Positions 31,107-52,546 of a DNA stretch of 64,000 nucleotides are shown here, in pieces. The notes beneath the pieces were generated by a model. It saw only the letters and a list, made by a program, of their open reading frames with translations, was not told where the DNA came from and ran no database searches. The stretch is taken from positions 1 through 64,000 of the IMG/VR virus record IMGVR_UViG_3300027816_000052; one strand, written 5' to 3'. Numbering within the stretch: position 1 is the stretch's first letter; each line of letters begins with the position of its first letter. Position numbers and translations under genes: made by a program.

Positions 31107-31208
31107 GTTAACAAAGGGGGTTAATGATAACCCCATTTGTTTTCTACCAACCTAAATCTTTCGAAACTTTGCCATGTCACCTGTAAATAGTGACACTTAT
31201 TCAGAAGT

Positions 31209-31225: not shown

Positions 31226-31235
31226 CTCTTTTTTG

Positions 31236-31305: not shown

Positions 31306-31310
31306 ATGAA

Positions 31311-31814: not shown

Positions 31815-31878
31815 TTGGCAGCGTCTTTTATGATGTGCTTGACCTCTTCGCTGGAGAAGCCCATTATGTGCTTGAGTA

Positions 31879-33072: not shown

Positions 33073-33078
33073 GTTTTT

Positions 33079-33345
33079 TTAAATTTTTGTTTTGTTTTTA
33101 ATTTTATTAATTTTATTTACAGTTTGATTAACTTCATCATTCACCACATTATACTTCTCAACCGCCTTATCAACTTTTTCTTCCAGTTCATCTATCGTTG
33201 ATGAGTGTTGGATTTTTTCTTTATTTTTCTTTTTAAGAAACCAAAAAAATTCTAATTTGGGAATAAAAAGAGGTAGAATTATTTGTGTTATAATTGTTAG
33301 TATGCTTATAACTGTTAATAAAAATATTATAATTATTTTAGCCAT
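33079..33345 (-). CDS. Membrane-anchored coiled-coil protein
   Basis: N-terminal TM; adjacent to the SPFH gene. Confidence 0.6.
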   Translation of the reverse strand: MAKIIIIFLLTVISILTIITQIILPLFIPKLEFFWFLKKKNKEKIQHSSTIDELEEKVDKAVEKYNVVNDEVNQTVNKINKIKNKTKI

Positions 33346-33550
33346 TTTGGTTTTTAAATTTAAAAATTATATCATTTATATCATTTCTTATTGATTCCAT
33401 ATCATCTATGTCAAGATAAAATGAAAATGAATCATCACCTTGACTACAGGTTAACCATATTTCATCATCACCACCTTGAATAAAAAATTCCAAGTCTTTA
33501 TCTCCTTGTGAAAATTTATATGTTTTTATTGTTTTCATTTTATAGTACAA
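33338..33550 (-). CDS. Hypothetical protein
   Basis: 70-aa ORF; the start may be MKTIKT. Confidence 0.55.
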   Translation of the reverse strand: MYYKMKTIKTYKFSQGDKDLEFFIQGGDDEIWLTCSQGDDSFSFYLDIDDMESIRNDINDIIFKFKNQNG

Positions 33551-33578
33551 ATATAGTATATGTTTTTAACATAAACAA
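33548..33578 (-). promoter_or_regulatory. Bacteroidota-type promoter
   Basis: TTG-N20-TATATTTG. Confidence 0.7.
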
Positions 33579-33579
33579 A

Positions 33580-33765
33580 TCAAATGAAAATTTCACCAAA
33601 TAAGGAAATATATTCATTTTTTGGTATTTTACAATAAACATCACCAACCCAAAAAAATACATCGTCACCAATTTCATTCGGTTCGGTGATATTCCATTTT
33701 TTAACAATATTGACAGGTATTTTGTCGTAATCTAAATTAGGGAAAGCAACATGTACGTAGTCCAT
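33580..33765 (-). CDS. Hypothetical protein
   Basis: 61-aa ORF downstream of a promoter. Confidence 0.55.
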   Translation of the reverse strand: MDYVHVAFPNLDYDKIPVNIVKKWNITEPNEIGDDVFFWVGDVYCKIPKNEYISLFGEIFI

Positions 33766-33781
33766 TTTTTTTTAGTTTACA

Positions 33782-33812
33782 CAAAGATAATAACAAATAT
33801 TTAAATTTCCAA
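33782..33812 (-). promoter_or_regulatory. Bacteroidota-type promoter
   Basis: TTG-N20-TATCTTTG. Confidence 0.75.
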
Positions 33813-33844
33813 TAACTGATAATATTTATTTTAAAAGTTGGTAT

Positions 33845-34630
33845 ATGAGAAATCTAATCAAAAAAGTTTTGCGTGAATTTGTATTAAAAGAAGCGGAAGA
33901 GACAGACCACGCAAAATGTCGTTATGTTAATAGAGTTGCGAATGAAAGAAATCATAAAACAACAAATGTTAAGGACAAAATTGGTAAAGAAGGAATTGAA
34001 AACATTAAATTTATCATCGAACTTGTTAAAAAAATAGATTTTCCAAAAAATATCGATATTGCAATTAATTTAGCTTATTCACCATCAAGAGATGTTAACA
34101 ATCCAGAAGGTTTTGAAAACGCAAAAGGATTTTATTTTAATGACCCTAATGATAATTGTACTAAAAAAGAAAATATTGAACCTAGCTGGGGACATTATTT
34201 GTGGTTAATAATAAGAGATAATTCTATCACAACAATAATGATTCATAGAACCAAACCAAAAGATTTAAGAGAGGTTAATATAGATAGATTAATAAATAAT
34301 TTAAATAACTATTTTGGACTTAATATTAAAGAAAAAGAACTTTCGTCGGCTGAAAATTTAAAACAAATAGATTTAACAAATGAGAGACTTTTCTTTAAGA
34401 TGATTAGTAAACCAGAAAAAAAATCTGAGGAATCTCCTTTAAAAAATGAAGAAATACTTCTTGTTAAACAAAAAAAATATGTTATTGATAAAATTAAAAA
34501 AACAATTCATCCAAAAAATAAACCAAAAGAAATACAGAAAATAGAAGAATTTATCAATTTAATTTTAAATTTAGAACCTTTTACCCCTGAAGATGAGAAA
34601 GCTATTGAATACTTAATTTCTTTGATTTGA
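33845..34630 (+). CDS. Hypothetical protein with LIKKVLRE...LKE leader
   Basis: 261 aa; ATATTTAT upstream. Confidence 0.7.
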   Translation: MRNLIKKVLREFVLKEAEETDHAKCRYVNRVANERNHKTTNVKDKIGKEGIENIKFIIELVKKIDFPKNIDIAINLAYSPSRDVNNPEGFENAKGFYFNDPNDNCTKKENIEPSWGHYLWLIIRDNSITTIMIHRTKPKDLREVNIDRLINNLNNYFGLNIKEKELSSAENLKQIDLTNERLFFKMISKPEKKSEESPLKNEEILLVKQKKYVIDKIKKTIHPKNKPKEIQKIEEFINLILNLEPFTPEDEKAIEYLISLI

Positions 34631-34918
34631 TTTTATAATTAATCTGTCATAATGCGTGAAATAACCCCGTTTATTAGCCTCATCTAATATTTCATCAGTT
34701 GTTGGTCTTGGTTGTTTTTCCAAATAATATTTGATATTTTTTTCATCCATATATTCTCTAATGGTTTCTTCAACATTACTAAATAAGCGATAAATATTAT
34801 CAGCTAAAATATCAGCATCAACCAATCCGGTTACATTTTCCATCATATCATCAAAAACAAAATTTGATGATTCATCCTTTTTAATAATCAAGATATAATA
34901 GTCGTATTTCATCTGCAA
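34613..34918 (-). CDS. Hypothetical protein
   Basis: 101-aa ORF. Confidence 0.6.
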   Translation of the reverse strand: MQMKYDYYILIIKKDESSNFVFDDMMENVTGLVDADILADNIYRLFSNVEETIREYMDEKNIKYYLEKQPRPTTDEILDEANKRGYFTHYDRLIIKSNQRN

Positions 34919-35364
34919 TGATAATCCGCCGCTTTAGTTGCGATTTGAATATTTGGTTTTACATTAACTTGATACCCCAATGAATTCGCCCACCCCTTTG
35001 TTGCACTGATTAATTGATTACTTTTATAAAATTCATCCTCATTATAATCCATATCTAATTCAAGTTTTAGACTGACATTAACTTTGTTTTTAAACCATTC
35101 CGCAATTTCAATCGTGCTTTCAGCTTCCTTCCAAAGTCTAGTCCATAAATCATTAATTCTATTGATTCTTTCTTTTGTGAAAATATAATGGACACCCCTA
35201 GTACCATAACGATAGGCGATAACGGAAACATAAACGGTTTCATTTGACACGTTTTGTGAATCAGTACCGATATGGATTTTTACATCAGGATTTTCCCTGA
35301 TAACCTCAAGAGTATGTTTTACAACATCTACTGGAGTTCCATCTAATTTTCTAAACACTTTCAT
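34909..35364 (-). CDS. RNase H-like YkuK (DUF458) family protein
   Basis: IHIGTDSQ...YVSVIA...L..EAESTIEIA...D.N...A..AD pattern. Confidence 0.8.
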   Translation of the reverse strand: MKVFRKLDGTPVDVVKHTLEVIRENPDVKIHIGTDSQNVSNETVYVSVIAYRYGTRGVHYIFTKERINRINDLWTRLWKEAESTIEIAEWFKNKVNVSLKLELDMDYNEDEFYKSNQLISATKGWANSLGYQVNVKPNIQIATKAADYHCR

Positions 35365-35376
35365 TTTATAGTTATT

Positions 35377-35733
35377 TTATTCGTCTACACTGATGAGGGG
35401 GAATTCAATTTTAAGTCTATAATGAATAAAATCATTCATATCTTCCACTAAATCAAAATATTTTCTATAAGACTCACCATTTGACATTTTTATTTTTAAA
35501 AATGGTTTGTAATAAACAACATAATCCTCAATATATAAGTTTTTGTTTTTAAGAATCTCTTCTTCTGTTATAAAAAAAGTTCCATTGTAATACCAATCAG
35601 CGTAATAAAATCCTTCTTTTCTTTCTTTACAAAATAAACTTTTTTTTCTGCGATTTTGCCAAACAAATTTATCATTTTCTATTTTTTCAAATTTTCTAAT
35701 ACTACAAATTTGTTTGATATTAATTTCTTCCAT
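35377..35733 (-). CDS. Hypothetical protein
   Basis: 118-aa ORF; TATCTTTG box at 35750-35757. Confidence 0.6.
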   Translation of the reverse strand: MEEINIKQICSIRKFEKIENDKFVWQNRRKKSLFCKERKEGFYYADWYYNGTFFITEEEILKNKNLYIEDYVVYYKPFLKIKMSNGESYRKYFDLVEDMNDFIHYRLKIEFPLISVDE

Positions 35734-35878
35734 TTTTAAAAGTTTGGTACAAAGATATGAAAAGTTTTATGAAAAAAAAAATTGCAACGATTTTAGCCTA
35801 CGTTAATATTTTGTGGGAAGAGCTTATCGTTATTAAGTTTCGCTTATTATACCAACACAATTTTTAATTCATAATACA

Positions 35879-35954
35879 TGGTGGACCGGAAGGGATTCGA
35901 ACCCTCATCCTCCTGAGTGCAAATCAGGTGCTCATCCAGTTGAGCTACCAGCCC
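35879..35954 (-). tRNA. tRNA-Ala(UGC), CCA encoded
   Basis: GGGCTGG/CCGGTCC with G3:U70; CCTGA-TTTGCAC-TCAGG. Confidence 0.95.
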
Positions 35955-36063
35955 ATGTTCCCGTTTTTCTTCATCATTTAGTTCACCACCCAGATGAACA
36001 AGTGGTGGATTTTGCTTTTGGAAGTCTGCATTACAGACCGTCACCACGGGAAAACCAACGCAG

Positions 36064-36138
36064 TAGTTCCTGTGTGACTTGAACACACGCCCTTTCGAAT
36101 GTAAATCGAACGCTCTAAACCAACTGAGCTAAGGAACT
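36064..36138 (-). tRNA. tRNA-Val(UAC)
   Basis: AGTTCCT/AGGAACT; TTCGA-TTTACAT-TCGAA. Confidence 0.9.
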
Positions 36139-36146
36139 ATATTTCG

Positions 36147-36218
36147 CACCCCCTGAAGAATTCGAATCCTCACCAACGATGTTGGAGATCGTTACTCTAC
36201 CAATTGAGCTAAAGGGGT
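36147..36218 (-). tRNA. tRNA-Trp(CCA)
   Basis: ACCCCTT/AGGGGGT; ACGAT-CTCCAAC-ATCGT; G73. Confidence 0.9.
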
Positions 36219-36228
36219 ATGTATTTTG

Positions 36229-36304
36229 GGTGAATAACGAGACTCGAACTCGCAAAAATCCGGGACCACAATCCGGAGTGTATACCAATTCCACCATATT
36301 CACC
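36229..36304 (-). tRNA. tRNA-His(GUG) with encoded G-1
   Basis: G-GTGAATA/TATTCAC-C; loop TTGTGGT. Confidence 0.9.
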
Positions 36305-36312
36305 ATAATTCG

Positions 36313-36391
36313 TACTCCCGGTGAGAATCGAACTCACACCCTTTCGGATCTGTTCCTAAAACAGACGCGGCTACCGTTACGCCACAGGAGT
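36313..36391 (-). tRNA. tRNA-Leu(UAG)
   Basis: ACTCCTG/CGGGAGT; TCTGT-TTTAGGA-ACAGA; variable arm. Confidence 0.9.
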
Positions 36392-36402
36392 GTTTAACAT
36401 CA

Positions 36403-36433
36403 CAAAGATATAACTTTATTTTCTTATCTCCAA
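36403..36433 (-). promoter_or_regulatory. Bacteroidota-type promoter for the Leu-His-Trp-Val-Ala tRNA run
   Basis: TTG-N20-TATCTTTG. Confidence 0.8.
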
Positions 36434-36442
36434 ATTAAACTG

Positions 36443-36514
36443 AGGTCGAAGTGAGAATCGAACTCACGTAAGAAGTTTTGCAGACTTCCGCCTAAACCAC
36501 TCGACCATTCGACC
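36443..36514 (-). tRNA. tRNA-Cys(GCA)
   Basis: GGTCGAA/TTCGACC; GAAGT-CTGCAAA-ACTTC; U73. Confidence 0.92.
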
Positions 36515-36700
36515 TTACTTTTCACCTAATTTTCTAATAATACCTCCCTTAGCTTCATACCAAGTACCCTGATAATTAAATTCAAATCCGGTATCTCTCA
36601 TACAAATACCCATAAATTCACCGTCTCTTGTTTTTAAACCAACCCCTGAAAAAACATCTTCAAGAATTATTTCACCGTTTTCATCTGTTGTTAATTTCAT
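36515..36700 (-). CDS. Small hypothetical protein (start re-called at MKLTTD)
   Basis: The longer call overlaps tRNA-Arg. Confidence 0.6.
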   Translation of the reverse strand: MKLTTDENGEIILEDVFSGVGLKTRDGEFMGICMRDTGFEFNYQGTWYEAKGGIIRKLGEK

Positions 36701-36717
36701 AATTTTAATTTTTTTTG

Positions 36718-36789
36718 TATCCCCCGAAGGATTCGAACCCTCACCAACTGAGTCGAAATCAGGTATGCTATCCATTACACTAGAGGGAC
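36718..36789 (-). tRNA. tRNA-Arg(UCG)
   Basis: GTCCCTC/GGGGGAT; CCTGA-TTTCGAC-TCAG; GAGGG-TTCGAAT-CCTTC. Confidence 0.85.
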
Positions 36790-37049
36790 TTTTTCTCTTT
36801 TCTTTTTTTCCATTCTACAGCAAGTGCTGCTCCAATAAAAGCGCCTAACATTGCAGCACCAAATAAACGTGTATCATTTACATAATTTACAGTGGTGAAA
36901 GCACCAAATAAAACAATTAATGCTGACCATATTCCGGATGCGATAGTTTTTCTTTCCTCCACTTTAATAAAATATAAAGTCCATGCAATATCAGCTAAAA
37001 TCATGGAAAACATAACCAGCAAAAATTTTAATTCAAAGGGTATATTCAT
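36780..37049 (-). CDS. Small three-TM membrane protein
   Basis: Three hydrophobic helices. Confidence 0.65.
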   Translation of the reverse strand: MNIPFELKFLLVMFSMILADIAWTLYFIKVEERKTIASGIWSALIVLFGAFTTVNYVNDTRLFGAAMLGAFIGAALAVEWKKRKEKKSL

Positions 37050-37492
37050 CTTTTTAATAATTTATCACATTTATTTTTCCAATTTGATGAGAGACATGAA
37101 ATTGGTGTTACTTTTGTAAGTTGATTAATTAATCTAATTTCTTGTGGATTATCATCCAAATGAAATACAAAATCATTTCCATTCTTTTTAAACCACCAAG
37201 CCTTTGGGTCGTGGTTTGTAAAAATCACTCGTTCCCTTGGGATTCCTAAATCTTTCGCCACCAAAAACAAATCTTCTTCATTTGACCACCAAAGAACATC
37301 ATCGTCTCTTTTAAAAGTTTCATCATCAGGATATTTCTTTCTGAAAAATTCTTTTGGATTTTCCGGTCTTGAGGTAACAATCCATACCTCAATGTTGGAA
37401 TCTTCAATTAATTCCTTACAATAATTTTGTATGAACAGCGAATGACCAAGACAATCATCAAAATCAAAACTTACTTTTTTCATGCTAACCAA
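37046..37492 (-). CDS. HAD-superfamily phosphatase/nucleotidase-like protein
   Basis: VSFDFDDCL, VWIVTSR and HLDDN motifs. Confidence 0.75.
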   Translation of the reverse strand: MVSMKKVSFDFDDCLGHSLFIQNYCKELIEDSNIEVWIVTSRPENPKEFFRKKYPDDETFKRDDDVLWWSNEEDLFLVAKDLGIPRERVIFTNHDPKAWWFKKNGNDFVFHLDDNPQEIRLINQLTKVTPISCLSSNWKNKCDKLLKR

Positions 37493-37782
37493 CGAATTAA
37501 ATATTTTGCTTGCATTTGAGATGTAAAATCAGCCTCACCCATATCTGTAACAGGAATTTCAAAACTTATCACTTCAGTATCCTCACCACCATCTCCCAAA
37601 AATAATGAATAATAAGCAACACCGAGTCTGATTTTATCAAAAAACGCTATTGGATTGTTTTTATATAGCATTTTTTTAATTTCGTTTTTTCTTATTGTAT
37701 TTAATTTTTTATCCATTTTATCTAAAGTTATTTTATCAACGCTATCCATTGCTTCTTTATATAATTCTTCGTCTGTCTTCAT
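37480..37782 (-). CDS. Hypothetical protein
   Basis: 100-aa ORF. Confidence 0.6.
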   Translation of the reverse strand: MKTDEELYKEAMDSVDKITLDKMDKKLNTIRKNEIKKMLYKNNPIAFFDKIRLGVAYYSLFLGDGGEDTEVISFEIPVTDMGEADFTSQMQAKYLIRWLA

Positions 37783-39296
37783 CGTATTAAATTAATATTA
37801 CCAATTTTATTAATTAAGTTATTAGCTATAATTCCGCTAAATTTATAAACATAAACACCATTCTGACAATTAAGCCCATCCCATGATTCGTTTTGATTGG
37901 TAAATTCATAAATTTTCTCACCCCAACTATTATAAATTTGCATTTTAAAATTTTCAATTTTTGAAATTGTTGTTACTTTAAATGAATCATTTATATTATC
38001 ATAATCGGGTGAAAATGTGTTAGGAATATAAATATCTCCACAAATTTCTGAATAAATTTCTAATGTTGTTAAATCGCCAAAACAACCAAATTCATTTATC
38101 TCATAAACACTTAATATGTTTTCAAAATTAGAAATGTTTGGTAAATTTATTGTTATAGTATTTTGTGTCAAATTTAATGTATCTTGATTTAAAATCCAAA
38201 TATATGAAGAATTTATATTACCAGTTGTTAAAAATTGTAAAGTTCTATCGAATTCTGAGCAATTTACAAAACTATTTTCACCGATAATAATAACATCTTC
38301 AGGATTTGGATTCACAACAACTAATATCGAATCGTTGTTTCTACAACCAAAAGAATCAATAAATGTATATTCAACCCAATTTGTTCCAAATTGTGGTAAA
38401 TAATTAGGACCAATATTCCAAGTACCACCAATAGGGAATGCTTGCATTTGAACCGGTGAATCATTAAAACATAGTGTGTCAACAGGATTAATTAATACTA
38501 CAGGTAATTGATTTACGTTTACAGTAAAAATAGTTGTATCTATACAATTATTAATTGTTTCTTCAATAATACTAATTTGTTGAGTCCCTATATTATTCCA
38601 AATATTTATTTGGGGATTACCTGTATAAAAAATTGAGTTATTTGTTGGATTTGCTAATTCATGAATTGTCGTATCCCCAAGACATACGGTTTGGACCAAT
38701 GGGGTTATTGGATTACTTTCAAAGTCTAAAGGAATATTGGTACCATTAAATAAATTAAATGGTGATAGATTACAGTTATTATTTCCCCAAGATCCCCAAG
38801 TACCGTCAGCACCAGCGGTTATTTGAATTATAATGTCCTCAGAGGAACATGTCTCAACAACTGTGGTTGTAAAACAAAAATTCCATGTACAATTTCCAAA
38901 ATCACCCCAATCATTACCGGGATTTCCATCAATAACACCACCTTGATTTGTTTCAAAAAACCAACCCGGTCCAGCAGAAATACCCGTTGATGATGATGTT
39001 ACCGTACCAGAAATCCAAACCCAATTACCAGAACCACCATTACAATTGGTAGGTGATGCTTGCGGAATAGGGGGTGTTAAAGAAGGACTTAGATTAATTT
39101 CAAATCCCTCAACCCAATTTGAACTAACGTTCAAACCGTTCCAACCATTCATTGTATAACACACATTTAAAACAGTTCCACTAGCGTATTGACCATTAAT
39201 TGGGGTTGGGTTTATTGAAAAACTTTCAATCCCATTACATTGATTAAACGCTAAATTACTAATTAAAGTAAAAATTATTAATAATACTTTTTTCAT
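37779..39296 (-). CDS. Secreted protein with gliding-motility-associated (T9SS type B) C-terminal domain
   Basis: Signal peptide; Ig/PKD-like repeats; C-terminal IYIPNTFSPDYDNINDSF...IYNSWGEKIY...WDG...GVYVY...GNINLIR. Confidence 0.85.
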   Translation of the reverse strand: MKKVLLIIFTLISNLAFNQCNGIESFSINPTPINGQYASGTVLNVCYTMNGWNGLNVSSNWVEGFEINLSPSLTPPIPQASPTNCNGGSGNWVWISGTVTSSSTGISAGPGWFFETNQGGVIDGNPGNDWGDFGNCTWNFCFTTTVVETCSSEDIIIQITAGADGTWGSWGNNNCNLSPFNLFNGTNIPLDFESNPITPLVQTVCLGDTTIHELANPTNNSIFYTGNPQINIWNNIGTQQISIIEETINNCIDTTIFTVNVNQLPVVLINPVDTLCFNDSPVQMQAFPIGGTWNIGPNYLPQFGTNWVEYTFIDSFGCRNNDSILVVVNPNPEDVIIIGENSFVNCSEFDRTLQFLTTGNINSSYIWILNQDTLNLTQNTITINLPNISNFENILSVYEINEFGCFGDLTTLEIYSEICGDIYIPNTFSPDYDNINDSFKVTTISKIENFKMQIYNSWGEKIYEFTNQNESWDGLNCQNGVYVYKFSGIIANNLINKIGNINLIR

Positions 39297-39462
39297 TTTT
39301 TATAAAAAATTAAGAGTTTAAACCACCACTTCCACCACATGAATTTTAATGTTAAAAGACCTTCTGGGTCATGGTAGTATATGATTGTTGGAATTAAAGG
39401 TTTATGGTCCTCGATAATAAATCGCTTTGACCTATCTGTTCTAATTTTCATGTTTGTTAATT

Positions 39463-39735
39463 TTATCGTTTACAATAATTCCATATTTCTTCCGCTGTAT
39501 TCCATTCCGAACCAACGTTTAACATACCGATTGGGTCTTCTTTAAACCACATTCGTTCTTTCCATTCACCAGTACCATTTAATCTAAAATAACTTATAAT
39601 TGAGAGTGAGATATTACTTGGTTCTAGTTCATTTGGGTCATTTGCGGAATTACCAATCCAATGGTCGATAAATCCATCTTTACAATAAATTCGTCGAAAT
39701 TTAACCCACCCTTCTTGTAGTTTTTCGGTTTTCAT
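39463..39735 (-). CDS. Hypothetical protein
   Basis: 90-aa ORF. Confidence 0.55.
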   Translation of the reverse strand: MKTEKLQEGWVKFRRIYCKDGFIDHWIGNSANDPNELEPSNISLSIISYFRLNGTGEWKERMWFKEDPIGMLNVGSEWNTAEEIWNYCKR

Positions 39736-39989
39736 ATAATTTCTAATGATATTAAACTCATAAATCTATCATGTGAGTCTAAAGAATAATAAATTCTAAC
39801 TTTTTGACCTTGTTCACTTATTAATTCTTTAAAATGTTTATGAATTAAAATTTTAACATCTTTATTTATCACCATAAATAAATGATTTTCTTTAAAATCA
39901 AGTTCAGATGGAATTTCTGTGTAATAAACATTTTTAATAATCAACTCAATAAAAGGGAATTTGTTTGTGTATGATGTTTCAATATTCAT
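39732..39989 (-). CDS. Hypothetical protein
   Basis: 85-aa ORF. Confidence 0.55.
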   Translation of the reverse strand: MNIETSYTNKFPFIELIIKNVYYTEIPSELDFKENHLFMVINKDVKILIHKHFKELISEQGQKVRIYYSLDSHDRFMSLISLEII

Positions 39990-40005
39990 TATTATTAATT
40001 TTTAG

Positions 40006-40079
40006 TTGTCCCACTCTGACTCGAACAGAGAACCTCCACATTATCAGTGTGACGATCTAACCAATTGATCTATGAGACA
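40006..40079 (-). tRNA. tRNA-Ile(GAU)
   Basis: TGTCTCA/TGGGACA; TCACA-CTGATAA-TGTGG. Confidence 0.92.
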
Positions 40080-40321
40080 ATAAGTGGTTATTTTATCGCT
40101 TTTATCCCTTGATCAGAGGGGAAGTGCTCGTAAAATAACCAAAACCAAACTTCAAATATCATTATATGTTCTATATAAAATTCGACAAAAGATAAACCCT
40201 AAAAAGCAACAAATCAAATTTATAATGGTAACATCATAAGATTGGGGATATAATATTTGTGTATATACACCAGCTAGGAATAAGGTAATGTAAGATAATA
40301 CTTTAAGTACGTGTTTCATTT

Positions 40322-40570
40322 TTATATAAAATAAGGTCCGTAGATAACACCCCCTGACTCAACAACACCCTTTTCCATTTCCCAAGCTTTTTTTAATGCT
40401 TCTTTAAGGGTATATACAGGACTAGCACCATTACCCCTAATTAACATGTGTGCGTGTTTGAAAACTCTTTTCTTTGAGATTTCTTTGGGAAAAATGATTA
40501 AGCTATTATCGCTATTTTTTTGATTTAAATAACGAGTTAACATTCCTTTTTTTGGTTCCATATCATTCAT
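40322..40570 (-). CDS. Hypothetical protein
   Basis: 82 aa; VFKHAH...EALKKAWEMEK motif. Confidence 0.6.
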   Translation of the reverse strand: MNDMEPKKGMLTRYLNQKNSDNSLIIFPKEISKKRVFKHAHMLIRGNGASPVYTLKEALKKAWEMEKGVVESGGVIYGPYFI

Positions 40571-40717
40571 TGTTTTTTTCTTTATCTTTAATTTCTTCTA
40601 TACGTCTGATGGTTGAGGGTTTAGTACATCTTCCACCGTAACCACAAAGATACGAAAGATTTCTGGTTTTTCTACGCACAATTTTACCTTGTTTACTCAT
40701 TTTGATTTTTTTATATG

Positions 40718-40789
40718 CGGTCTATGACGGGTTCGATCCGTCTACTCTACCGTGACAGGGTAGGATGATAGCCATTTCACCAATAGACC
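40718..40789 (-). tRNA. tRNA-Asp(GUC)
   Basis: GGTCTAT/ATAGACC; CTACC-CTGTCAC-GGTAG; T-loop ATCGAAC. Confidence 0.88.
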
Positions 40790-40800
40790 AAAAGAAATTG

Positions 40801-40872
40801 AGGACTCGGAGAATTACGATATCTCGACCTAAAAGTTAACAGCTTTTTGCTCTGCCCCTGAGCTACGAGTCC
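40801..40872 (-). tRNA. tRNA-Asn(GUU)
   Basis: GGACTCG/CGAGTCC; AAAAG-CTGTTAA-CTTTT; atypical T-arm. Confidence 0.82.
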
Positions 40873-40878
40873 TTATTG

Positions 40879-40951
40879 TGGTACTTCGTGGTTCCGAGCC
40901 ACGCTCCTCCCGTCTTCAGCGGGATGCTTTCACCAGATTAGCTTAAGTACC
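40879..40951 (-). tRNA. tRNA-Phe(GAA)
   Basis: GGTACTT/AAGTACC; TCCCG-CTGAAGA-CGGGA; T-loop CTCGGAA. Confidence 0.85.
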
Positions 40952-41006
40952 GTTATCAGTTACAAAACCTCTCAAATTAGGAACTTCACCGATGTAGTTT
41001 TTTTAG

Positions 41007-41090
41007 TGGAAGTAGTAAGACTCGAACTTACGAACCCCTTTCGGAGAAGTGATTTACAGTCACTTGGAATTGCCGCTATCCGATACTTCC
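41007..41090 (-). tRNA. tRNA-Tyr(GUA)
   Basis: GGAAGTA/TACTTCC; AGTGA-CTGTAAA-TCACT; long variable arm. Confidence 0.92.
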
Positions 41091-41094
41091 ATTT

Positions 41095-41158
41095 GCTGTC
41101 TCTCCATGCTGTCAATGCGGATGTTTTATCATGAATTTAGGTACCTCGCATTGCTCCC
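41095..41158 (-). ncRNA. Small RNA with TGACAG-N3-GGAGAGAC motif (copy 1)
   Basis: CAATGCG/CGCATTG stem followed by a motif shared with 42034..42103. Confidence 0.55.
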
Positions 41159-41164
41159 ATATTG

Positions 41165-41236
41165 TAGTCCCGACGAGAATCGAACTCGCATTACCGGAGT
41201 GAAAATCCGGGTTCCGAACCATTAGAAGACGGGACC
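41165..41236 (-). tRNA. tRNA-Glu(UUC)
   Basis: GGTCCCG/CGGGACT; CCGGA-TTTTCAC-TCCGG. Confidence 0.9.
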
Positions 41237-41260
41237 ATTTAAAATTTTAATGAACTAAAG

Positions 41261-41334
41261 CTGTCCCGGAAGGGGTCGAACCTTCAAACTTCCCCTTCAA
41301 AGGGGGATGACTTTGCCAATTTGTCTACAGGACA
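41261..41334 (-). tRNA. tRNA-Gln(UUG)
   Basis: TGTCCTG/CGGGACA; TCCCC-CTTTGAA-GGGGA; G73. Confidence 0.9.
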
Positions 41335-41339
41335 ATAAG

Positions 41340-41473
41340 CGGGGGAGGTTGGATTCGCACCAACAATCGTTACATTTCAGAGTAATTGCTTTACTGTTTC
41401 GAAGTATCTCATATTCTCACCACTCGGACGAGGGAAAATGAAATGAGTTTTTCTTTTTATTAGCTTCTCCCCC
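41340..41473 (-). ncRNA. tRNA-like RNA with large D-loop insertion and 8-nt anticodon loop
   Basis: GGGGGAG/CTCCCCC, GCT/AGC D-stem, TTAC/GTAA, GTTGG-TGCGAAT-CCAAC. Confidence 0.7.
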
Positions 41474-41485
41474 AAGAAATTATAG

Positions 41486-41568
41486 TGGATGTTGACGGAA
41501 TCGAACCGCGTTTCCAAACAGCACCCCCAACCTCATCATGAACGGTCGGTCAAGGTTTAGCAACACCC
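41486..41568 (-). ncRNA. tmRNA-TLD-like / Ala-acceptor tRNA-like RNA (83 nt)
   Basis: GGGTGTTG/CAACATCC with G3:U70, A73, T-loop TTCGATT, no D-stem. Confidence 0.7.
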
Positions 41569-41579
41569 AAAAAAGTTAG

Positions 41580-41653
41580 TTCTCCCAGCGAGACTCGAAC
41601 TCACAACTCCCATATTAAAAGTATGGTACTCTAACCAATTGAGTTACAGGAGA
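41580..41653 (-). tRNA. tRNA-Lys(UUU)
   Basis: TCTCCTG/TGGGAGA; CCATA-CTTTTAA-TATGG. Confidence 0.9.
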
Positions 41654-41658
41654 TTATG

Positions 41659-41792
41659 TGATGAGTGATGGATTCGAACCACCATAAGCTGCTTCGTTTA
41701 GGATATCCTCTAAGCAACAGCGGGATATGTATAGTGTTGGGTAACTATATCACTAATATCCACCGCAACCCGTTCCCTTGGGCTATCTCATC
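41659..41792 (-). ncRNA. tRNA-like RNA with extended anticodon and variable arms
   Basis: GATGAG/CTCATC, GCCC/GGGT D-stem, GGTGG-TTCGAAT-CCATC T-arm, no canonical anticodon loop. Confidence 0.7.
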
Positions 41793-41797
41793 AAATT

Positions 41798-41942
41798 GAG
41801 AGGACACCGATACCTCCTCTCTGGGTGGGTCTAATTTCGAATTCTTTTATGACTTGTTCTGAAAGTCGCCAACATACTCATCATTTCTGATTTAGTCATT
41901 GCACGTCCCACTTAACTTTAAACGCGGTCGGTTTTAAGGTAT
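41798..41942 (-). ncRNA. Candidate structured RNA downstream of tRNA-Pro
   Basis: GTGGG/CCCAC, GACTT/AAGTC, GAGAGGA/TCCTCTC, ATACCT/AGGTAT. Confidence 0.45.
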
Positions 41943-41950
41943 GTATTGTG

Positions 41951-42026
41951 TCGAGGTGAGAGGATTTGAACCTCCATGATATCTTCGCCCCAAACGAAGA
42001 GACTTAGCCAATTAGTCCACACCTCG
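41951..42026 (-). tRNA. tRNA-Pro(UGG)
   Basis: CGAGGTG/CACCTCG; CTTCG-TTTGGGG-CGAAG. Confidence 0.9.
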
Positions 42027-42414: not shown

Positions 42415-42819
42415 TCATTCTAATTTTTTTTCTAAATTTAAATAATCGATTGCTTTTTGTAATAATTTTACATCATCATTAAATCTACCCAAACCCAAGT
42501 TGCAGTTGTTGCATATATAACCCCTAAACGTATCAGTAAAATGACAATGATCTAAAACCCATGATGTTGTATGTTTATCACATATTGGACAATTTCCGGA
42601 TGGTGGTGGTGAATACTTAATTTTTAAATGTTTTCTTATTTCAGCTAATTTTTGATTGCAACTTTTGCATGTATTTTTTCTTCCAGCATCGATTGTTGAG
42701 AAGAATGGAAATTCGTCAATTTGTTTTTCAATATTGCAATTTCTGCATGTTTTTGTTTCTCCTGAAATAACTGGTTTTATGTTTTCTTCAGGTTCAAATA
42801 AATTTAATTGATTCATCAA
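42415..42819 (-). CDS. Endonuclease VII-like (His-Me) nuclease
   Basis: CPICD...VLDHCH...FRGYICNNCNLGLGRFNDD; N-terminal CxxC zinc motifs. Confidence 0.85.
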   Translation of the reverse strand: MMNQLNLFEPEENIKPVISGETKTCRNCNIEKQIDEFPFFSTIDAGRKNTCKSCNQKLAEIRKHLKIKYSPPPSGNCPICDKHTTSWVLDHCHFTDTFRGYICNNCNLGLGRFNDDVKLLQKAIDYLNLEKKLE

Positions 42820-42878
42820 ATTTTATTTGAACATAATGAGGTTCTGTGTTAAAGTAAACTATTCATATATTTATGGTT

Positions 42879-43697
42879 ATGAAAAAGATTAAATTAACAG
42901 AATCGGATTTATATAGAATTGTTAGAAAGGTTCTTCTTGAGCAAGATGAAAAAAAGAAAAGTTTTACATTTTCTCCGGGTTCATTTGAATCTCTTATAAC
43001 ATCATCATCAGGTGAAAGATTTGTTAAACATCTTAATAACAAATATGATAGGGTTATTGTTAATGAAGAGTTGGATTTAAGTGAAACACCAATTCAATCC
43101 TTGCCGGATAATCTTCATGTTGAGGGAAATTTGGATTTAGAAGGAACGCAAATTCAATCCTTACCGGATAATCTTCATGTTGGGGGGAATTTGTTTTTAT
43201 ATGGATGCAAAAATCTTAAATCCTTACCGGATAATCTTTATGTTGGGGGAAATTTGGAGTTAGATGGAATACCAATTCAATACTTAGGGAATAATATTCA
43301 TGTTAAGGGAAATTTGGAGTTAGATGGAATACCAATTCAATCCTTACCGGATAATCTTCATGTTGGGGGAGATTTGAGTTTAGTAGGAACACCAATTCAA
43401 TCCTTACCGGATAATCTTCATGTTGGGGGATATTTGGATTTATATGGAACACCAATTCAATCCTTACCGGATAATCTTCATGTTGGGGGAAGTTTGTATT
43501 TAAGAGGAACACCAATTCAATCCTTACCGGATAATCTTCATGTTGAGGGAGATTTGTTTTTAGGTAAAACACCAATTCAATCCTTACCGAATAATCTTGA
43601 CGTTAAGGGGACAATTTATATTAAAGGAACACCATTAAATGATAATGATGAATTGGTTAAGAAATATGAAGAAAAATATAGAATTATTAGAGTTTAA
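42879..43697 (+). CDS. LRR-like repeat protein with MKKIKLTESDL leader
   Basis: About nine tandem 20/21-aa repeats; start re-called because ATATTTAT overlaps the ATG at 42873. Confidence 0.88.
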   Translation: MKKIKLTESDLYRIVRKVLLEQDEKKKSFTFSPGSFESLITSSSGERFVKHLNNKYDRVIVNEELDLSETPIQSLPDNLHVEGNLDLEGTQIQSLPDNLHVGGNLFLYGCKNLKSLPDNLYVGGNLELDGIPIQYLGNNIHVKGNLELDGIPIQSLPDNLHVGGDLSLVGTPIQSLPDNLHVGGYLDLYGTPIQSLPDNLHVGGSLYLRGTPIQSLPDNLHVEGDLFLGKTPIQSLPNNLDVKGTIYIKGTPLNDNDELVKKYEEKYRIIRV

Positions 43698-50776: not shown

Positions 50777-52546
50777 ATGCAAGGATTAACAAAAGAGCAA
50801 TTAGCGTTAGAGTATGTTAGGTGTTTAAAAAGCACACCATATGCACTTAAAACGTATTTACAAACATATGATAACACGGTACAAAAATATGTCCCTCTTG
50901 AGCTATTCAAAGACCAGCAACAACTAATCAACGATTATGATACGTTTGAAGAAAACATTGCGTTAAAATATCGTCAAGCTGGCGTATCAACAGCTACAGC
51001 GGGTTGGGCTTCAAAAATACTTGCTTTTGCGAAAAAAGAAAAACCTGAAAAAATTCTAATTATTGCAAACAAATTGGATACCGCCGTTGAGATGGCGAAT
51101 AAGATTAGAAGTTTTATTGACCAGTGGCCTAAATGGGTTGGTATTGAGTTTTCAGATGAAAAGAACGCTGCTAGACATTTTAAATTAAATAATGATAGTG
51201 AGGTTAAAGCTGTTGCCACTTCTAAAGATGCTCTTAGAGGTTATACACCAACAATTCTTATTTTTGATGAGGCAGCTTATATTGAAGCTGATGATGATTT
51301 CTGGGCTGCTTGTATGGCATCTCTTTCCACCGGTGGTAAAGTCATTGTAATATCAACACCAAACGGATTTGATCCAATTTATTATGAAATTTATGACCAA
51401 TCAATTCGTAATATGAATAACTTCAAAATTACAGAAATGTATTGGTATAGAGATCCCAGATATACAAAAGATTTATATCTAGTTAAAACAAATGATATCG
51501 TGGATTATCTTTTAAATAGAGAAGAAAGAAAAGATTTAGAAATTATTGATTTTTCACATATAAGTCCACATGAAAGAGATTTTAATATAATCAAGGATTA
51601 TATTGGTCAAGGGTTCAAACCATGCTCAACATGGTTTGAAAATATGGTTAAAAAATTAAAATATGATAGAAGAAAAGTTGCACAAGAACTAGATTGTCAG
51701 TTTTTAGGTTCAGGTGACAACGTTGTAGATTCAACAATTCTTGAAGATATTAGAGAAAATCAAGTTTGTGAGCCAAAATATAAAACAATGGGAGGTTCTT
51801 TATGGGTTTGGAAAGAACCCGAACTTGGTCATAAGTACGTTTGTGGCTTGGATGTCTCAAGAGGAGACAGTGATGATTTTTCAGCTTTTCAGATAATTGA
51901 TTTTGAAACCAGAGAACAAGTTGCGGAATATCTTGGTAAAGTACCACCAGATGTGATGGCGGAAATAGCGTATAAGTGGGGAACAACATATAACGCTTAT
52001 ATTGTTATTGATATTACCGGTGGTATGGGGGTTTCTACTGCTAGAAAATTACAAGAATTAAATTATAAAAATTTATATATCGATGGGCTTGAGCTTGGTA
52101 ATAAATGGAAATATGATGCAAAAGCACTTGATAAAATTCCCGGTATTAATTTCAATAATAAAAGAGTTCAGATTATTTCTTCATTTGAGGAGGCTTTAAG
52201 ACATAAATTTAAAGTTTATAGTAGTAGATTATTAAATGAGTTAAATTCATTTGTTTATATTAATGGTAGACCTGATCACCAAAAGGGTCGTCATGATGAT
52301 TTAATCATGTCAATTGCTATGGCAATTTATGTTTCCGAATTTTCTTTCACACAATTAGAAAAAGTTACGGAACATACGAAAGTTATGATTGAATCATGGC
52401 AAGTTAATACATATGAACCAAAACAAACTTCACAATTCTTTAATCCAAGCGTATCTTTTACTGATGATAAAAGTATATATAGAAATAACCCAACAAGAAA
52501 AGACTATGAACAACATTCTTGGTTATTTGGTGGGATAAGAAGGTAA
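50777..52546 (+). CDS. gp17: Terminase large subunit (T4 gp17-like)
   Basis: LKYRQAGVST Walker A, LIFDEAA Walker B, ISTPNG, GLDVSRG and HDDLIMS nuclease motifs. Confidence 0.93.
   Translation: MQGLTKEQLALEYVRCLKSTPYALKTYLQTYDNTVQKYVPLELFKDQQQLINDYDTFEENIALKYRQAGVSTATAGWASKILAFAKKEKPEKILIIANKLDTAVEMANKIRSFIDQWPKWVGIEFSDEKNAARHFKLNNDSEVKAVATSKDALRGYTPTILIFDEAAYIEADDDFWAACMASLSTGGKVIVISTPNGFDPIYYEIYDQSIRNMNNFKITEMYWYRDPRYTKDLYLVKTNDIVDYLLNREERKDLEIIDFSHISPHERDFNIIKDYIGQGFKPCSTWFENMVKKLKYDRRKVAQELDCQFLGSGDNVVDSTILEDIRENQVCEPKYKTMGGSLWVWKEPELGHKYVCGLDVSRGDSDDFSAFQIIDFETREQVAEYLGKVPPDVMAEIAYKWGTTYNAYIVIDITGGMGVSTARKLQELNYKNLYIDGLELGNKWKYDAKALDKIPGINFNNKRVQIISSFEEALRHKFKVYSSRLLNELNSFVYINGRPDHQKGRHDDLIMSIAMAIYVSEFSFTQLEKVTEHTKVMIESWQVNTYEPKQTSQFFNPSVSFTDDKSIYRNNPTRKDYEQHSWLFGGIRR

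What the first reader, a model, noticed from the sequence alone, without database searches (positions are those of the whole stretch)
42879..43697. LRR-like family with invariant scaffold and hypervariable concave-face residues
Seen: four dispersed paralogues (2..622, 635..1114, 26441..27148, 42879..43697). In the 60/63-nt tandem units the scaffold IQSLPDNLHVGG is near-invariant at DNA level, while the xLxLxx positions vary (DLSLVG, YLDLYG, SLYLRG, DLFLGK, NLELDG, NLFLYG). Whole units are duplicated exactly (GSMYLNRCKNL twice; NLELDGIPIQ twice). Known: these positions form the ligand-binding surface of LRR solenoids. Inference: a recombination-shuffled binder repertoire, for example against host defence proteins.
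Basis: partly seen in the sequence, partly recalled or inferred. Interest (0 to 1): 0.62.

Follow-up and report, generated by a model that had tools for sequence, protein, structure and literature searches.

The report
Phage family of variable LRR binders
A large freshwater phage carries about a dozen scattered copies of a small leucine-rich-repeat protein whose framework is identical down to the DNA while four exposed residues per repeat differ, which looks like a virus-encoded set of diversified binding proteins whose targets are still unknown.

Summary
ORF 42873..43697 (274 aa) is one of at least 12 paralogues in a 256-kb T4-like jumbo phage record, four of them in the window.

- **Fold:** AlphaFold gives a confident solenoid (pLDDT 92). 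The only solved sequence relative is the Vibrio flagellar LRR protein FlrP (E 1.7e-28).
- **Variation:** In 52 twenty-residue units, four codons (6, 10, 12, 14) hold 58% of the nucleotide diversity. Scaffold codons are almost invariant, although several are rare codons. Silent sites are more uniform in the scaffold (pS 0.04) than in the N-terminal domain of the same genes (pS 0.15). This points to homogenisation plus diversification, not neutral drift. No reverse transcriptase was found, so a DGR is unlikely.
- **Shuffling:** Exact 60-323-nt blocks are shared in different orders. Other assemblies show chimeric paralogues and repeat-number differences. Contigs also break at these genes, so assembly chimeras cannot be excluded.
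- **New:** A 25-residue N-terminal tag (MKKIKLTESDL...) also heads about 10 non-LRR ORFs. With the T4-type prohead protease present, I infer a capsid-targeting signal; this is untested.

The target (host defence or host surface) is unknown. I rate it a new variant of a known kind, interest 0.6.

The parts
42873..43697 (+). LRR family gene of the finding (274 aa): N-terminal tag, cap, 8 internal units plus terminal unit, C-cap
   Evidence: ORF; AF2 model pLDDT 92.2, pTM 0.82; FlrP match E 1.7e-28 over residues 85-248
42860..42872 (+). Conserved 13-nt upstream motif (tatttatggtt-type). Similarity among paralogues begins only here
   Evidence: Alignment of 9 upstream regions; homology of contig L024 to the genome starts 13 nt before the ATG of the 116-kb paralogue
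42879..42953 (+). N-terminal 25-residue tag MKKIKLTESDLYRIVRKVLLEQDEK, with (L/I)-x-E motifs
   Evidence: Most conserved stretch across the metagenomic family; the profile also hits about 10 non-LRR ORFs of the genome; helix 10-24 at pLDDT 61-71
42954..43070 (+). N-terminal cap domain (strand plus two helices) ahead of the repeats
   Evidence: DSSP of the AF2 model: E30-33, H35-42, H47-57, E60-63 at pLDDT above 90; two sequence types of this cap exist among paralogues
43071..43598 (+). Tandem array of 60/63-nt units; variable codons 6, 10, 12, 14 in register L1 P2 D3 N4 L5 x6 V7 G8 G9 x10 L11 x12 L13 x14 x15 T16 P17 I18 Q19 S20
   Evidence: TRF; unit segmentation; entropy and diversity
43584..43694 (+). 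Last unit and C-terminal cap (IYIKGTPLNDNDELVKKYEEKYRIIRV)
   Evidence: Conserved across the family; helix 259-266 and strand 270-273 in the model
2..622 (+). Paralogue cut at its 5' end by the start of the record (206 aa seen; full form 231 aa in contig L015)
635..1114 (+). Short paralogue (159 aa, 3 units), directly downstream of the previous one
26441..27148 (-). Divergent paralogue (235 aa): tag, cap, about 4 units, then a C-terminal extension with three KW...RG.AN motifs
63455..64000 (+). Start of a 559-aa ORF that runs out of the window. Its C-terminal 156 residues (genome 64664..65134) are a tag+cap+LRR module
17647..17979 (+). Non-LRR ORF (110 aa) whose N-terminus matches the tag profile (MSKIVKLKERDLTEIVKRAL)
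   Evidence: Iterated profile search, E 1.9e-8; weak in the first round, E 0.31
56986..57708 (+). T4-type prohead protease (Peptidase_S77), the inferred processing enzyme for the tag
   Evidence: PF03420, 78.8 bits, above cut-off. The link to the tag is inference only
58046..59593 (+). Acidic scaffold-like protein between protease and major capsid protein, the inferred docking partner of the tag
   Evidence: Position and composition; complex prediction gave no answer
42415..42819 (-). Endonuclease VII-family (HNH-type) gene immediately upstream. The flank 41500-42840 that contains it is not covered in three of four runs that hold the downstream flank
   Evidence: PF02945, E 9.3e-16; depth table

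Best explanation
The finding is one member of a phage-specific multigene family: at least 12 genes in a 256-kb T4-like jumbo phage, and hundreds of relatives in viromes.

**Shown**
- The proteins are small, lack a signal peptide and are leucine-rich-repeat solenoids.
- Each has a 25-residue N-terminal tag, a small cap, 3-14 units of 20 or 21 residues, and a C-terminal cap.
- The structural residues of the units are kept identical at the DNA level across units and genes.
- The outward-facing residues of the two short strands (unit positions 6, 10, 12 and 14) differ by non-synonymous changes rich in D, N, S, Y, W and R.

**Inferred**
- Unit duplication, unequal crossing-over and gene conversion between paralogues homogenise and reshuffle the units.
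- Selection keeps and renews diversity on the exposed face. The phage therefore carries a repertoire of different binding surfaces on one scaffold.
- The N-terminal tag is shared with about 10 unrelated small ORFs. Its invariant [ILV]-x-E core matches the (L/I)-x-E cleavage motif of T4-type prohead proteases. I take it to be a common targeting signal, most likely into the prohead core, as with the capsid-targeting sequence of T4 internal proteins.
- On that reading the binders would be delivered with the DNA and meet host proteins such as defence proteins early in infection.

The targets are unknown.
For: **Fold**
- AF2 pLDDT 92.2, pTM 0.82.
- Foldseek: FlrP 8z5u at 34% identity and TM 0.78 normalised by target, then Leptospira LRR proteins and SspH1/IpaH LRR domains.
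- phmmer to FlrP at E 1.7e-28. FlrP is an experimentally seen LRR binder.

**Family size**
- At least 12 genes in the genome.
- 581 proteins in the word search and 302 IMG/VR stretches.
- The nearest ESM Atlas clusters are predominantly viral and unnamed.

**Pattern of variation**
- Entropy peaks at positions 14, 12, 10 and 6, and codon entropy is about equal to amino-acid entropy.
- At x10/12/14, pN is 0.55. In the scaffold, pN is 0.05 and pS 0.04.
- Four codons hold 58% of the diversity. Diversity at first and second positions of the x codons is 0.50, against 0.025 at scaffold third positions. The N-terminal domain of the same genes has pS 0.147 and pN 0.061.
- The invariant scaffold codons CCG, GGG, TCC and TTG are rare in this genome (13, 7, 5 and 11% usage), so codon bias does not explain the invariance.

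**Shuffling**
- Exact 60-323-nt blocks are shared between and within paralogues.
- There are 34 signatures in 58 units; 10 are shared between genes, in different orders.
- Four genes are reproduced at 100% with both flanks in independent contigs.
- The syntenic orthologue in a phage 92-94% identical in the flanks has a different 5' half and 3 more units.
- Chimeras appear in other assemblies. In one case all 50 differences lie in the gene and none in 2,985 nt of flank.

**Tag**
- Profile hits on about 10 non-LRR ORFs.
- A T4-type protease, portal and capsid protein are present.
- T4 capsid-targeting-sequence biology is described in PMC7411985 and PMC3012670.
- The Edno5 homologue sits in an early accessory region, not among structural genes.
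Against: - No binding partner, expression data or virion proteome exists for any member.
- The dN/dS-type figures compare paralogous repeat units, not alleles. They rest on short-read metagenome assemblies of a repetitive gene.
- Contigs of this phage end inside these genes in at least five assemblies. Chimeras and repeat-number differences may therefore be assembly paths through exact repeats of 100-189 nt.
- Logan unitigs could not resolve this.
- Variable non-consensus positions are a generic property of LRR families.
- The tag-as-capsid-signal idea rests on analogy only: (L/I)-x-E is a short motif and conservation extends well beyond it.
- The complex prediction of the tag with the scaffold gave no answer.
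- Pfam LRR models are matched only below threshold.
Confidence: 0.55

Rival explanations
1. The proteins are virion-anchored adhesins or accessory host-range determinants. The conserved N-terminal tag and cap dock them on the particle. The variable LRR face binds variable host surface structures, giving a multivalent cloud of binders.
For: - A conserved N-terminus with a variable distal part is the usual architecture of phage receptor-binding proteins.
- In phage Goslar a shared N-terminal DUF7941 module carries LRR/beta-helix, carbohydrate-binding or hydrolase domains on tail-associated filaments (PMC13742148).
- Several paralogues neighbour structural genes. The 161-kb paralogue is next to a gp25-like baseplate gene. 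42873 is near a tail-lysin-like peptidase. 2..1114 is near a 1451-aa beta-helix protein.
- One tag-bearing non-LRR ORF lies in the baseplate module.
Against: - The proteins are small and give no sign of trimerisation.
- The paralogues are scattered through replication and accessory regions as well.
- The Edno5 homologue lies in the early region next to the repressor and exo/RecT genes.
- The tag is only 25 residues and contains a protease-type motif.
Confidence: 0.25
2. The proteins act in the cytoplasm and are not packaged. The LRR face selects host proteins, and the shared N-terminal helix recruits a common phage partner, for instance the phage's own Lon-like protease, for removal or re-use of the target.
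For: - There is no signal peptide.
- A Lon-type ATP-dependent protease is encoded at 19384..21570 (phrog_4871, E 4e-211).
- LRR-plus-effector logic is known from IpaH/SspH1, whose LRR domains are fold matches.
- Other architectures fuse the same LRR to a conserved C-terminal domain.
Against: - No link between the tag and the protease was tested or seen.
- The fused C-terminal domain has no recognisable fold.
- The idea is by analogy only.
Confidence: 0.1
3. There is no selection for binding diversity. The units are recent duplicates kept uniform by gene conversion, and the x positions are simply unconstrained, so the pattern is a by-product of concerted evolution in a dispensable repeat protein.
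For: - Non-consensus positions vary in every LRR family.
- Scaffold silent sites are more uniform than the N-terminal domain of the same genes, which shows that homogenisation operates.
Against: - Neutral sites embedded in conversion tracts should be homogenised together with the scaffold. Instead, pN at x10/12/14 is 0.55 against pS of 0.04-0.15.
- Almost all nucleotide differences are non-synonymous.
- The residues found there are the binding-prone D, N, S, Y, W and R.
- The family is kept in many copies across hundreds of viral contigs.
Confidence: 0.08
4. The diversity is made by a targeted mutagenesis system of the diversity-generating-retroelement (DGR) type acting on the x codons.
For: Variation is confined to a few codons. 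Many x codons are one step from AAT (AGT, GAT, TAT).
Against: - No reverse transcriptase was found in the 256-kb record, while controls rang. The record is only 85% complete.
- The x codons also vary at the third position (TGG, AGG, TTG, GAG, AGA, GTA), which adenine-specific mutagenesis of an AAT/AAC template does not give.
- Dozens of dispersed targets with no template repeat do not fit a DGR.
Confidence: 0.02

Closest known systems
FlrP of Vibrio alginolyticus (PDB 8Z5U/8Z5W/8Z60), an LRR protein bound to the rod of the polar flagellar motor
   Same: It has the same 20-residue LRR subtype (LP-x-x-L-x-V-x-G-x-L-x-L-x-x-T-x-I). phmmer gives E 1.7e-28 over residues 85-248. Foldseek gives 34% identity and TM 0.78 (normalised by target). 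It is a beta-solenoid that works by binding other proteins.
   Different: - FlrP is a single-copy bacterial periplasmic protein with a Sec signal peptide.
- The phage proteins have no signal peptide.
- They carry a different N-terminal tag and cap.
- They form a multigene family with unit-level hypervariability.
LRR domains of IpaH/SspH1 type III effectors (YopM, named from my own knowledge, is of the same type)
   Same: They have short bacterial-type LRR units with an LP motif. Fold matches have probability 1.0 and E 1e-4 to 1e-3. The LRR serves as the target-recognition module.
   Different: - No NEL ligase or any other catalytic domain follows the repeats.
- There is no secretion signal.
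- Sequence identity is only 17-20%.
- NCBIfam XopL and XopAC hits are far below cut-off.
Diversified LRR receptor repertoires (lamprey variable lymphocyte receptors, plant NLR/RLP LRRs, Listeria internalins)
   Same: They have an invariant scaffold, hypervariable exposed x positions of the xLxLxx strand, and module shuffling between copies. This is established knowledge; an engineered VLR-based scaffold appears among the weaker fold matches (3rfs, E 5.8e-3, below the E <= 0.001 set).
   Different: - The carrier here is a bacteriophage.
- Units are 20 residues long with two short strands.
- There is no somatic assembly machinery.
- The copies are complete dispersed genes.
T4 internal proteins IPI/IPII/IPIII and Alt, with their capsid-targeting sequence
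   Same: Heterogeneous, fast-evolving small proteins share only a short N-terminal peptide that ends in a prohead-protease site. In T4 they are packed in the head, injected with the DNA, and at least IPI* blocks a host restriction enzyme (PMC7411985, PMC3012670). This phage has the T4-type protease, portal and capsid protein.
   Different: - There is no sequence similarity of the tag to the T4 sequence.
- The conserved stretch is longer (25 residues).
- Packaging and cleavage are untested.
- The T4 proteins are not LRRs.
Goslar (Chimalliviridae) DUF7941 proteins
   Same: They form a paralogous family in a jumbo phage. A shared N-terminal module carries different C-terminal binding domains, including LRR/beta-helix ones.
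   Different: - DUF7941 is a large globular module found only in chimalliviruses.
- The tag here is a 25-residue helix.
- This phage is T4-like.
- No Pfam match to DUF7941 was seen.

Membership tests
Leucine-rich repeat superfamily | Tandem units of 20-30 residues with the consensus LxxLxLxx(N/T/C)xL | tested here: met
   Units of 20 or 21 residues read ...V-G-G-x-L-x-L-x-x-T-x-I-x-x-L-P-D-N-L, or C-x-x-L in the 21-residue units. The first L of the motif is displaced by one residue (V7).
Leucine-rich repeat superfamily | Solenoid fold with one coil per unit and a parallel beta-sheet | tested here: met
   AF2 pLDDT 92.2 with regular short strands every 20 residues. Foldseek probability is 1.0 to many solved LRR proteins. 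This is a prediction, not an experiment.
Leucine-rich repeat superfamily | Match to curated LRR profiles above threshold | tested here: not met
   Pfam LRR_4, LRR_14 and LRR_EndoS matched only at E 0.06-0.1, below gathering scores. Some relatives carry precomputed LRR_1/LRR_4/LRR_14 hits.
Leucine-rich repeat superfamily | Significant sequence similarity to a solved LRR protein | tested here: met
   FlrP (8z5u_0), E 1.7e-28, residues 85-248.
FlrP-like periplasmic flagellar LRR proteins | Sec signal peptide and periplasmic location | tested here: not met
   The N-terminus MVMKKIKLTESDLYRIVRKVLLEQDEKKK is charged throughout, with no hydrophobic core (sequence). FlrP has signal peptide M1-A19.
FlrP-like periplasmic flagellar LRR proteins | Binding to the flagellar rod and FliF loops | not testable with these tools
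   No host or flagellar proteins are known for this phage.
T4-type capsid-targeted internal (ejection) proteins | A short N-terminal peptide shared by otherwise unrelated proteins of the phage | tested here: met
   The tag profile hits 11 LRR genes and about 10 non-LRR ORFs.
T4-type capsid-targeted internal (ejection) proteins | A T4-type prohead protease in the genome and a matching cleavage motif in the peptide | tested here: met
   Peptidase_S77 at 78.8 bits. The tag holds K-L-T-E|S and L-L-E|Q. The (L/I)-x-E specificity of T4 gp21 is from my own knowledge. Cleavage itself is untested.
T4-type capsid-targeted internal (ejection) proteins | Presence in the mature head and ejection into the host | not testable with these tools
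   There is no isolate and no proteome. The complex prediction with the scaffold protein gave no answer.
Diversity-generating retroelement targets | A reverse transcriptase encoded nearby | tested here: not met
   PF00078: no match in the 256-kb record, while controls rang. The record is 85% complete.
Diversity-generating retroelement targets | Variation restricted to positions that are adenine in a template repeat | tested here: not met
   The x codons vary at all three positions (diversity 0.19-0.49 at third positions) and include TGG, AGG, TTG, GAG, AGA and GTA. No template repeat was identified.
IpaH/SspH novel-E3-ligase effectors | C-terminal NEL ligase domain after the LRR | tested here: not met
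   The protein ends 25 residues after the last unit. No Pfam or NCBIfam domain was found.

The most novel reading that the evidence does not exclude
A jumbo phage packs a diversified arsenal of LRR binders, together with other tagged small proteins, into its head by means of a common N-terminal capsid-targeting tag. It injects them with the DNA to neutralise variable host defence proteins. This would be a virus-side counterpart of LRR-based immune repertoires. The same dispersed paralogues would also serve as recombination sites that rearrange the genome between strains.
Probability: 0.2. Interest if true: 0.85.

Novelty: new variant of a known kind. Interest (0 to 1): 0.6.

Why it matters
LRR repertoires with an invariant scaffold and hypervariable exposed residues are a hallmark of cellular immune receptors and of some bacterial effectors. 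A phage-borne, dispersed multigene version has not been described in the papers I could search, yet it is abundant in viromes.

If the proteins are binders of host defence or host surface molecules, the family would be:
- a ready-made natural library for finding phage-host interaction targets;
- a marker of arms-race loci in uncultured jumbo phages;
- a compact 20-residue LRR scaffold for binder engineering.

The shared N-terminal tag may point to a general protein-targeting signal in this phage group, which virion proteomics could test directly.

There is also a practical consequence. These genes fragment, and possibly mis-join, short-read assemblies of such phages.

Tried and rejected
- **Curated families:** PHROGs, PADLOC and NCBIfam gave no family for the LRR genes.
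- **Cultured phages:** megablast gave nothing. tblastn gave only Edno5 (two database records of that one phage), Vibrio phage 367.14 and EBPR podovirus 1.
- **DGR:** no reverse transcriptase, and the codon pattern does not fit.
- **Reads:**
  - Only Logan k=31 unitigs were on offer.
  - The array is shattered into 46-94-nt pieces, so neither repeat number nor junctions could be resolved.
  - Three of the four runs lack the left flank 41500-42840.
- **Record of L012:** The genome search on it failed because the record is not held.
- **GTDB genomes:**
  - The single-protein scan found no close relative.
- **Complex prediction:** tag plus cap (residues 1-66) with the scaffold-like protein gave no answer, score 0.00. 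This is not evidence either way.
- **Second architecture:** the C-terminal domain of the P0005 type folded at pLDDT 82 but has no PDB fold match. It gave no functional clue.
- **Literature:** searches for a phage LRR multigene family, the LTESDL motif and Kyanoviridae gp96 gave nothing specific.
- **Upstream regions:** they share only about 13 nt, so no common promoter could be named.
- **Antisense ORFs:** those inside the arrays (43303..43575, 108..506) are by-products of the repeat.
- **Not run:** the large representative search, because the word search had already found hundreds of relatives.
Full report
**1. What is in the sequence**

The window is the first 64 kb of a 256,029-bp virus record (IMG/VR type, linear, estimated 85% complete, 29.9% G+C).

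It is a T4-like jumbo phage. The evidence from the window:
- large terminase at 50777..52546;
- a T4-type portal carrying an intein at 52559..55699;
- Peptidase_S77 prohead protease at 56986..57708;
- an acidic scaffold-like protein at 58046..59593;
- a gp23-like capsid protein at 59617..61476;
- a Lon-like protease at 19384..21570;
- 22 tRNA genes.

The finding's ORF is 42873..43697 on the + strand, 274 aa. Tandem Repeats Finder reports 43071..43598 with period 60, 8.8 copies and 83% matches, and similar arrays at 117..541 and 867..1014.

- 2..622 is cut by the start of the record.
- 26441..27148 is on the minus strand.

The family is larger than reported. The whole record has at least 12 members, including 63455..65134, 91139..91900, 116421..117539, 146925..147656, 152088..152861(-), 161166..162308(-), 221577..222626(-, divergent) and 226947..227534(-).

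**2. Anatomy**

Each protein has four parts:
- a 25-residue N-terminal peptide, MKKIKLTESDLYRIVRKVLLEQEEE;
- a cap of about 40 residues that comes in two sequence types;
- 3 to 14 units of 20 residues, or 21 residues where C-K-N-L replaces T-P-I;
- a C-terminal cap, IYIxGTPLxDNDELVxKYxxKY.

The unit register is L1 P2 D3 N4 L5 x6 V7 G8 G9 x10 L11 x12 L13 x14 x15 T16 P17 I18 Q19 S20.

Similarity between paralogues begins only about 13 nt upstream of the ATG. The duplicated entity is therefore essentially the ORF.

**3. Fold and relatives**

Curated libraries do not claim the protein.
- Pfam gives only sub-threshold LRR_4, LRR_14, LRR_EndoS and pAdhesive_15 hits.
- PHROGs, PADLOC and NCBIfam give nothing useful.

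AlphaFold2, run on an alignment of 30 family members, gives a confident model: pLDDT 92.2, pTM 0.82. Two short strands recur every 20 residues (L5-x6-V7 and L11-x12). The first 30 residues score lower, at 61-71.

Foldseek against the PDB finds, in order:
- chain 8z5u_0 (34% identity, TM 0.78 normalised by target);
- Leptospira LRR proteins;
- the LRR domains of SspH1 and IpaH effectors;
- SHOC2.

By sequence, 8z5u_0 is the only solved relative, at E 1.7e-28 over residues 85-248. It is FlrP of Vibrio alginolyticus, a periplasmic LRR protein found bound to the rod of the polar flagellar motor (bioRxiv 10.64898/2025.12.04.692373).

The LRR assignment is therefore sound. The hypervariable x10, x12, x14 and x15 correspond to the exposed positions 3, 5, 7 and 8 of the canonical LxxLxLxx strand. 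This mapping is my reading of the consensus. I had no coordinates, so I could not measure curvature or solvent exposure.

**4. Is the variation non-random?**

I took 52 twenty-residue units from the seven closely related paralogues.

- *Entropy.* Amino-acid entropy is 3.24, 2.63, 2.25 and 1.71 bits at positions 14, 12, 10 and 6. It is 1.45 at position 15 and 1.0 at position 8. It is at most 0.63 elsewhere. Codon entropy is almost the same as amino-acid entropy, so nearly every nucleotide difference changes the protein.
- *Pooled comparisons of the 38 distinct units.* pN is 0.55 at x10/12/14. In the twelve scaffold codons pN is 0.05 and pS 0.04.
- *Concentration of diversity.* The four x codons hold 58% of all nucleotide diversity, which is the top of 4,845 possible four-codon sets. 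Diversity is 0.50 at their first and second positions, against 0.025 at scaffold third positions.
- *Internal control.* In the N-terminal domain of the same genes, pS is 0.147 and pN 0.061. That is ordinary purifying selection, with more silent divergence than in the repeat scaffold.
- *Codon bias.* The invariant scaffold codons include CCG, GGG, TCC and TTG. These make up only 13, 7, 5 and 11% of their codon families in this genome, so bias cannot explain the invariance.

Together these results mean two things. The scaffold is kept uniform by common descent or gene conversion. The exposed positions are kept or made different.

Under neutrality, sites embedded in conversion tracts would be homogenised too. 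I therefore take this as diversifying selection.

Two caveats apply. These are comparisons of paralogous units, not of alleles. They also rest on short-read assemblies.

A diversity-generating retroelement is unlikely.
- No reverse transcriptase was found in the record.
- The x codons vary at third positions too.

**5. Shuffling**

Evidence within the record:
- Exact blocks of 60-323 nt are shared between and within paralogues. A 243-nt block is present three times in the 161-kb gene.
- Among 58 units there are 34 xLxLxx signatures. Ten are shared by two or more genes, in different orders.

Evidence from other assemblies:
- Four genes (91, 146, 152 and 226 kb) are reproduced at 100% identity with both flanks in independent IMG/VR contigs, so their unit order is trustworthy.
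- At the syntenic locus of the 146-kb gene, a phage whose flanks are 92-94% identical has the other type of N-terminal cap and three more units. The last five units are conserved.
- A phage whose flanks are 77-81% identical holds a different family member at that same locus.

Chimeric junctions in near-identical contigs:
- the 5' part of the 161-kb gene joined to the 3' part of 42873, seen in three ENA samples, with 178 or 158 residues;
- the 5' part of the 152-kb gene joined to the 3' part of 2..622;
- the first 460 nt of 42873 joined to the 3' part of the 116-kb gene.

In the last case all 50 differences from the record lie inside the gene, and none lies in 2,985 nt of flank. One contig has one 243-nt block fewer in the 161-kb gene.

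The first two chimeric pairs are in inverted orientation in the record. Real recombination between them would invert segments of about 118 and 152 kb.

There is a strong reservation.
- IMG/VR contigs of this phage are colinear pieces that begin and end inside these genes: 415-43288, 43361-116827, 116761-152721 and 161740-227443.
- The crossover points coincide with exact repeats of 100-189 nt.
- Assembly chimeras would therefore look exactly like recombinants.
- The only read data on offer were k=31 unitigs, which shatter in the array.
- They show only that three of four runs hold the right flank without the left flank 41500-42840.

I therefore count unit-level shuffling as supported, and strain-level genome rearrangement as open.

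**6. The N-terminal tag**

A profile of the first 27 residues, iterated on all ATG ORFs of 80 or more residues in the record, recovers the 11 LRR genes. It also recovers about 10 unrelated small ORFs:

| Genome start | Strand | Length (aa) | Note |
|---|---|---|---|
| 152029 | - | 157 | |
| 207944 | - | 133 | |
| 67994 | - | 145 | |
| 87716 | + | 94 | |
| 225373 | + | 115 | |
| 88002 | + | 137 | |
| 67537 | - | 143 | Kyano_Gp96 homologue |
| 17647 | + | 110 | inside the window |
| 165181 | + | 252 | in the baseplate module |
| 246508 | + | 105 | |

The common core is [ILV]-[TNK]-E-[SK]-x-[LF].

In T4, the internal proteins and Alt share only a short N-terminal capsid-targeting sequence.
- The sequence brings them into the prohead core and is then removed by the prohead protease.
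- The proteins are ejected with the DNA, and they are a diverse set of counter-defence proteins (PMC7411985, PMC3012670).

From my own knowledge, that protease cuts after (L/I)-x-E. The tag contains L-T-E and L-L-E, and this phage has the T4-type protease.

I therefore propose that the tag is such a targeting signal. This is inference only. A complex prediction of the tag with the scaffold-like protein gave no answer.

**7. Distribution**

- The word search found 581 relatives, almost all metagenomic and unnamed.
- An IMG/VR scan found 302 stretches.
- The nearest ESM Atlas clusters are predominantly viral.
- Among cultured phages, tblastn found a 50%-identical relative in Edwardsiella phage Edno5 and weaker hits (24-25% identity) in Vibrio phage 367.14 and EBPR podovirus 1. 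The Edno5 gene lies in the early accessory region between the repressor and the exo/RecT genes.
- A second architecture occurs in other contigs and in Flavobacterium sp. SUN046: a short N-terminus, the same LRR, and a conserved C-terminal domain of about 150 residues. That domain has no recognisable fold.
- The 20-residue 'LPDNLxVGG' LRR is therefore a widespread, uncharacterised phage module.

**8. Verdict**

- The LRR and exposed-face reading is supported.
- Recombination shuffling is supported at the unit level and unresolved at the genome level.
- The proposed target, host defence proteins, is untested. A virion-adhesin role remains a serious rival; phage Goslar offers a precedent of a shared N-terminal module carrying LRR domains (PMC13742148).

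I rate it a new variant of a known kind.

Noticed in passing
window 1 and genome end 256029: The record starts inside an LRR paralogue, which is an assembly break in a repeat. It ends in a run of C that looks like a sequencing or assembly artefact. Contig L015 continues upstream of position 1 through an LRR gene into sequence 98.9% identical to genome 152241..158846.
   Followed up: partly
window 2182..4325 and 31031..42026: There are 22 tRNA genes in clusters. The last one (tRNA-Pro, 41950..42026) lies just upstream of the Endonuclease VII gene and the LRR gene.
   Followed up: no
window 52559..55699: The T4-type portal gene is interrupted by an intein (Intein_splicing plus an HNH-like stretch), giving a 1046-aa product. 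Contig L015 shows ribonucleotide reductase genes with inteins and LAGLIDADG domains in the same phage.
   Followed up: partly
window 26441..26650 (C-terminal part of the minus-strand paralogue): The divergent paralogue ends in three copies of a short motif, KW-x(5-8)-RG-x-AN. The motif is also present in metagenomic relatives P0026 and P0109. Its function is unknown.
   Followed up: no
window 43303..43575 (-) and 108..506 (-): Long antisense ORFs with their own 20-residue periodicity run through the repeat arrays. They are by-products of the repeat, not genes.
   Followed up: yes
window 19384..21570 (-): A phage-encoded Lon-like ATP-dependent protease (phrog_4871, E 4e-211). It is a possible partner for tagged proteins, but nothing links them yet.
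   Followed up: no
window 12399..12595: A 51-nt tandem repeat (about 3.4 copies) lies inside the 784-aa ORF that has a minor-tail-protein-like C-terminus.
   Followed up: no
window 61551..63023: An ORF combines Mom-like DNA-modification and endonuclease VII-like PHROG matches, directly after the capsid gene.
   Followed up: no
L024 1..2993 (IMG/VR contig 3300027806_000037): The 3 kb upstream of an otherwise 99.95%-identical copy of the 116-kb paralogue has no match anywhere in the 256-kb record. It could be part of the missing 15% of the genome, a strain-specific insertion, or a mis-join.
   Followed up: partly
genome 221577..222626 (-), locus L019: A divergent 349-aa member has no tag and only 2-3 recognisable units at its N-terminus. 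These are followed by an acidic C-terminal region of about 220 residues with no family match.
   Followed up: partly
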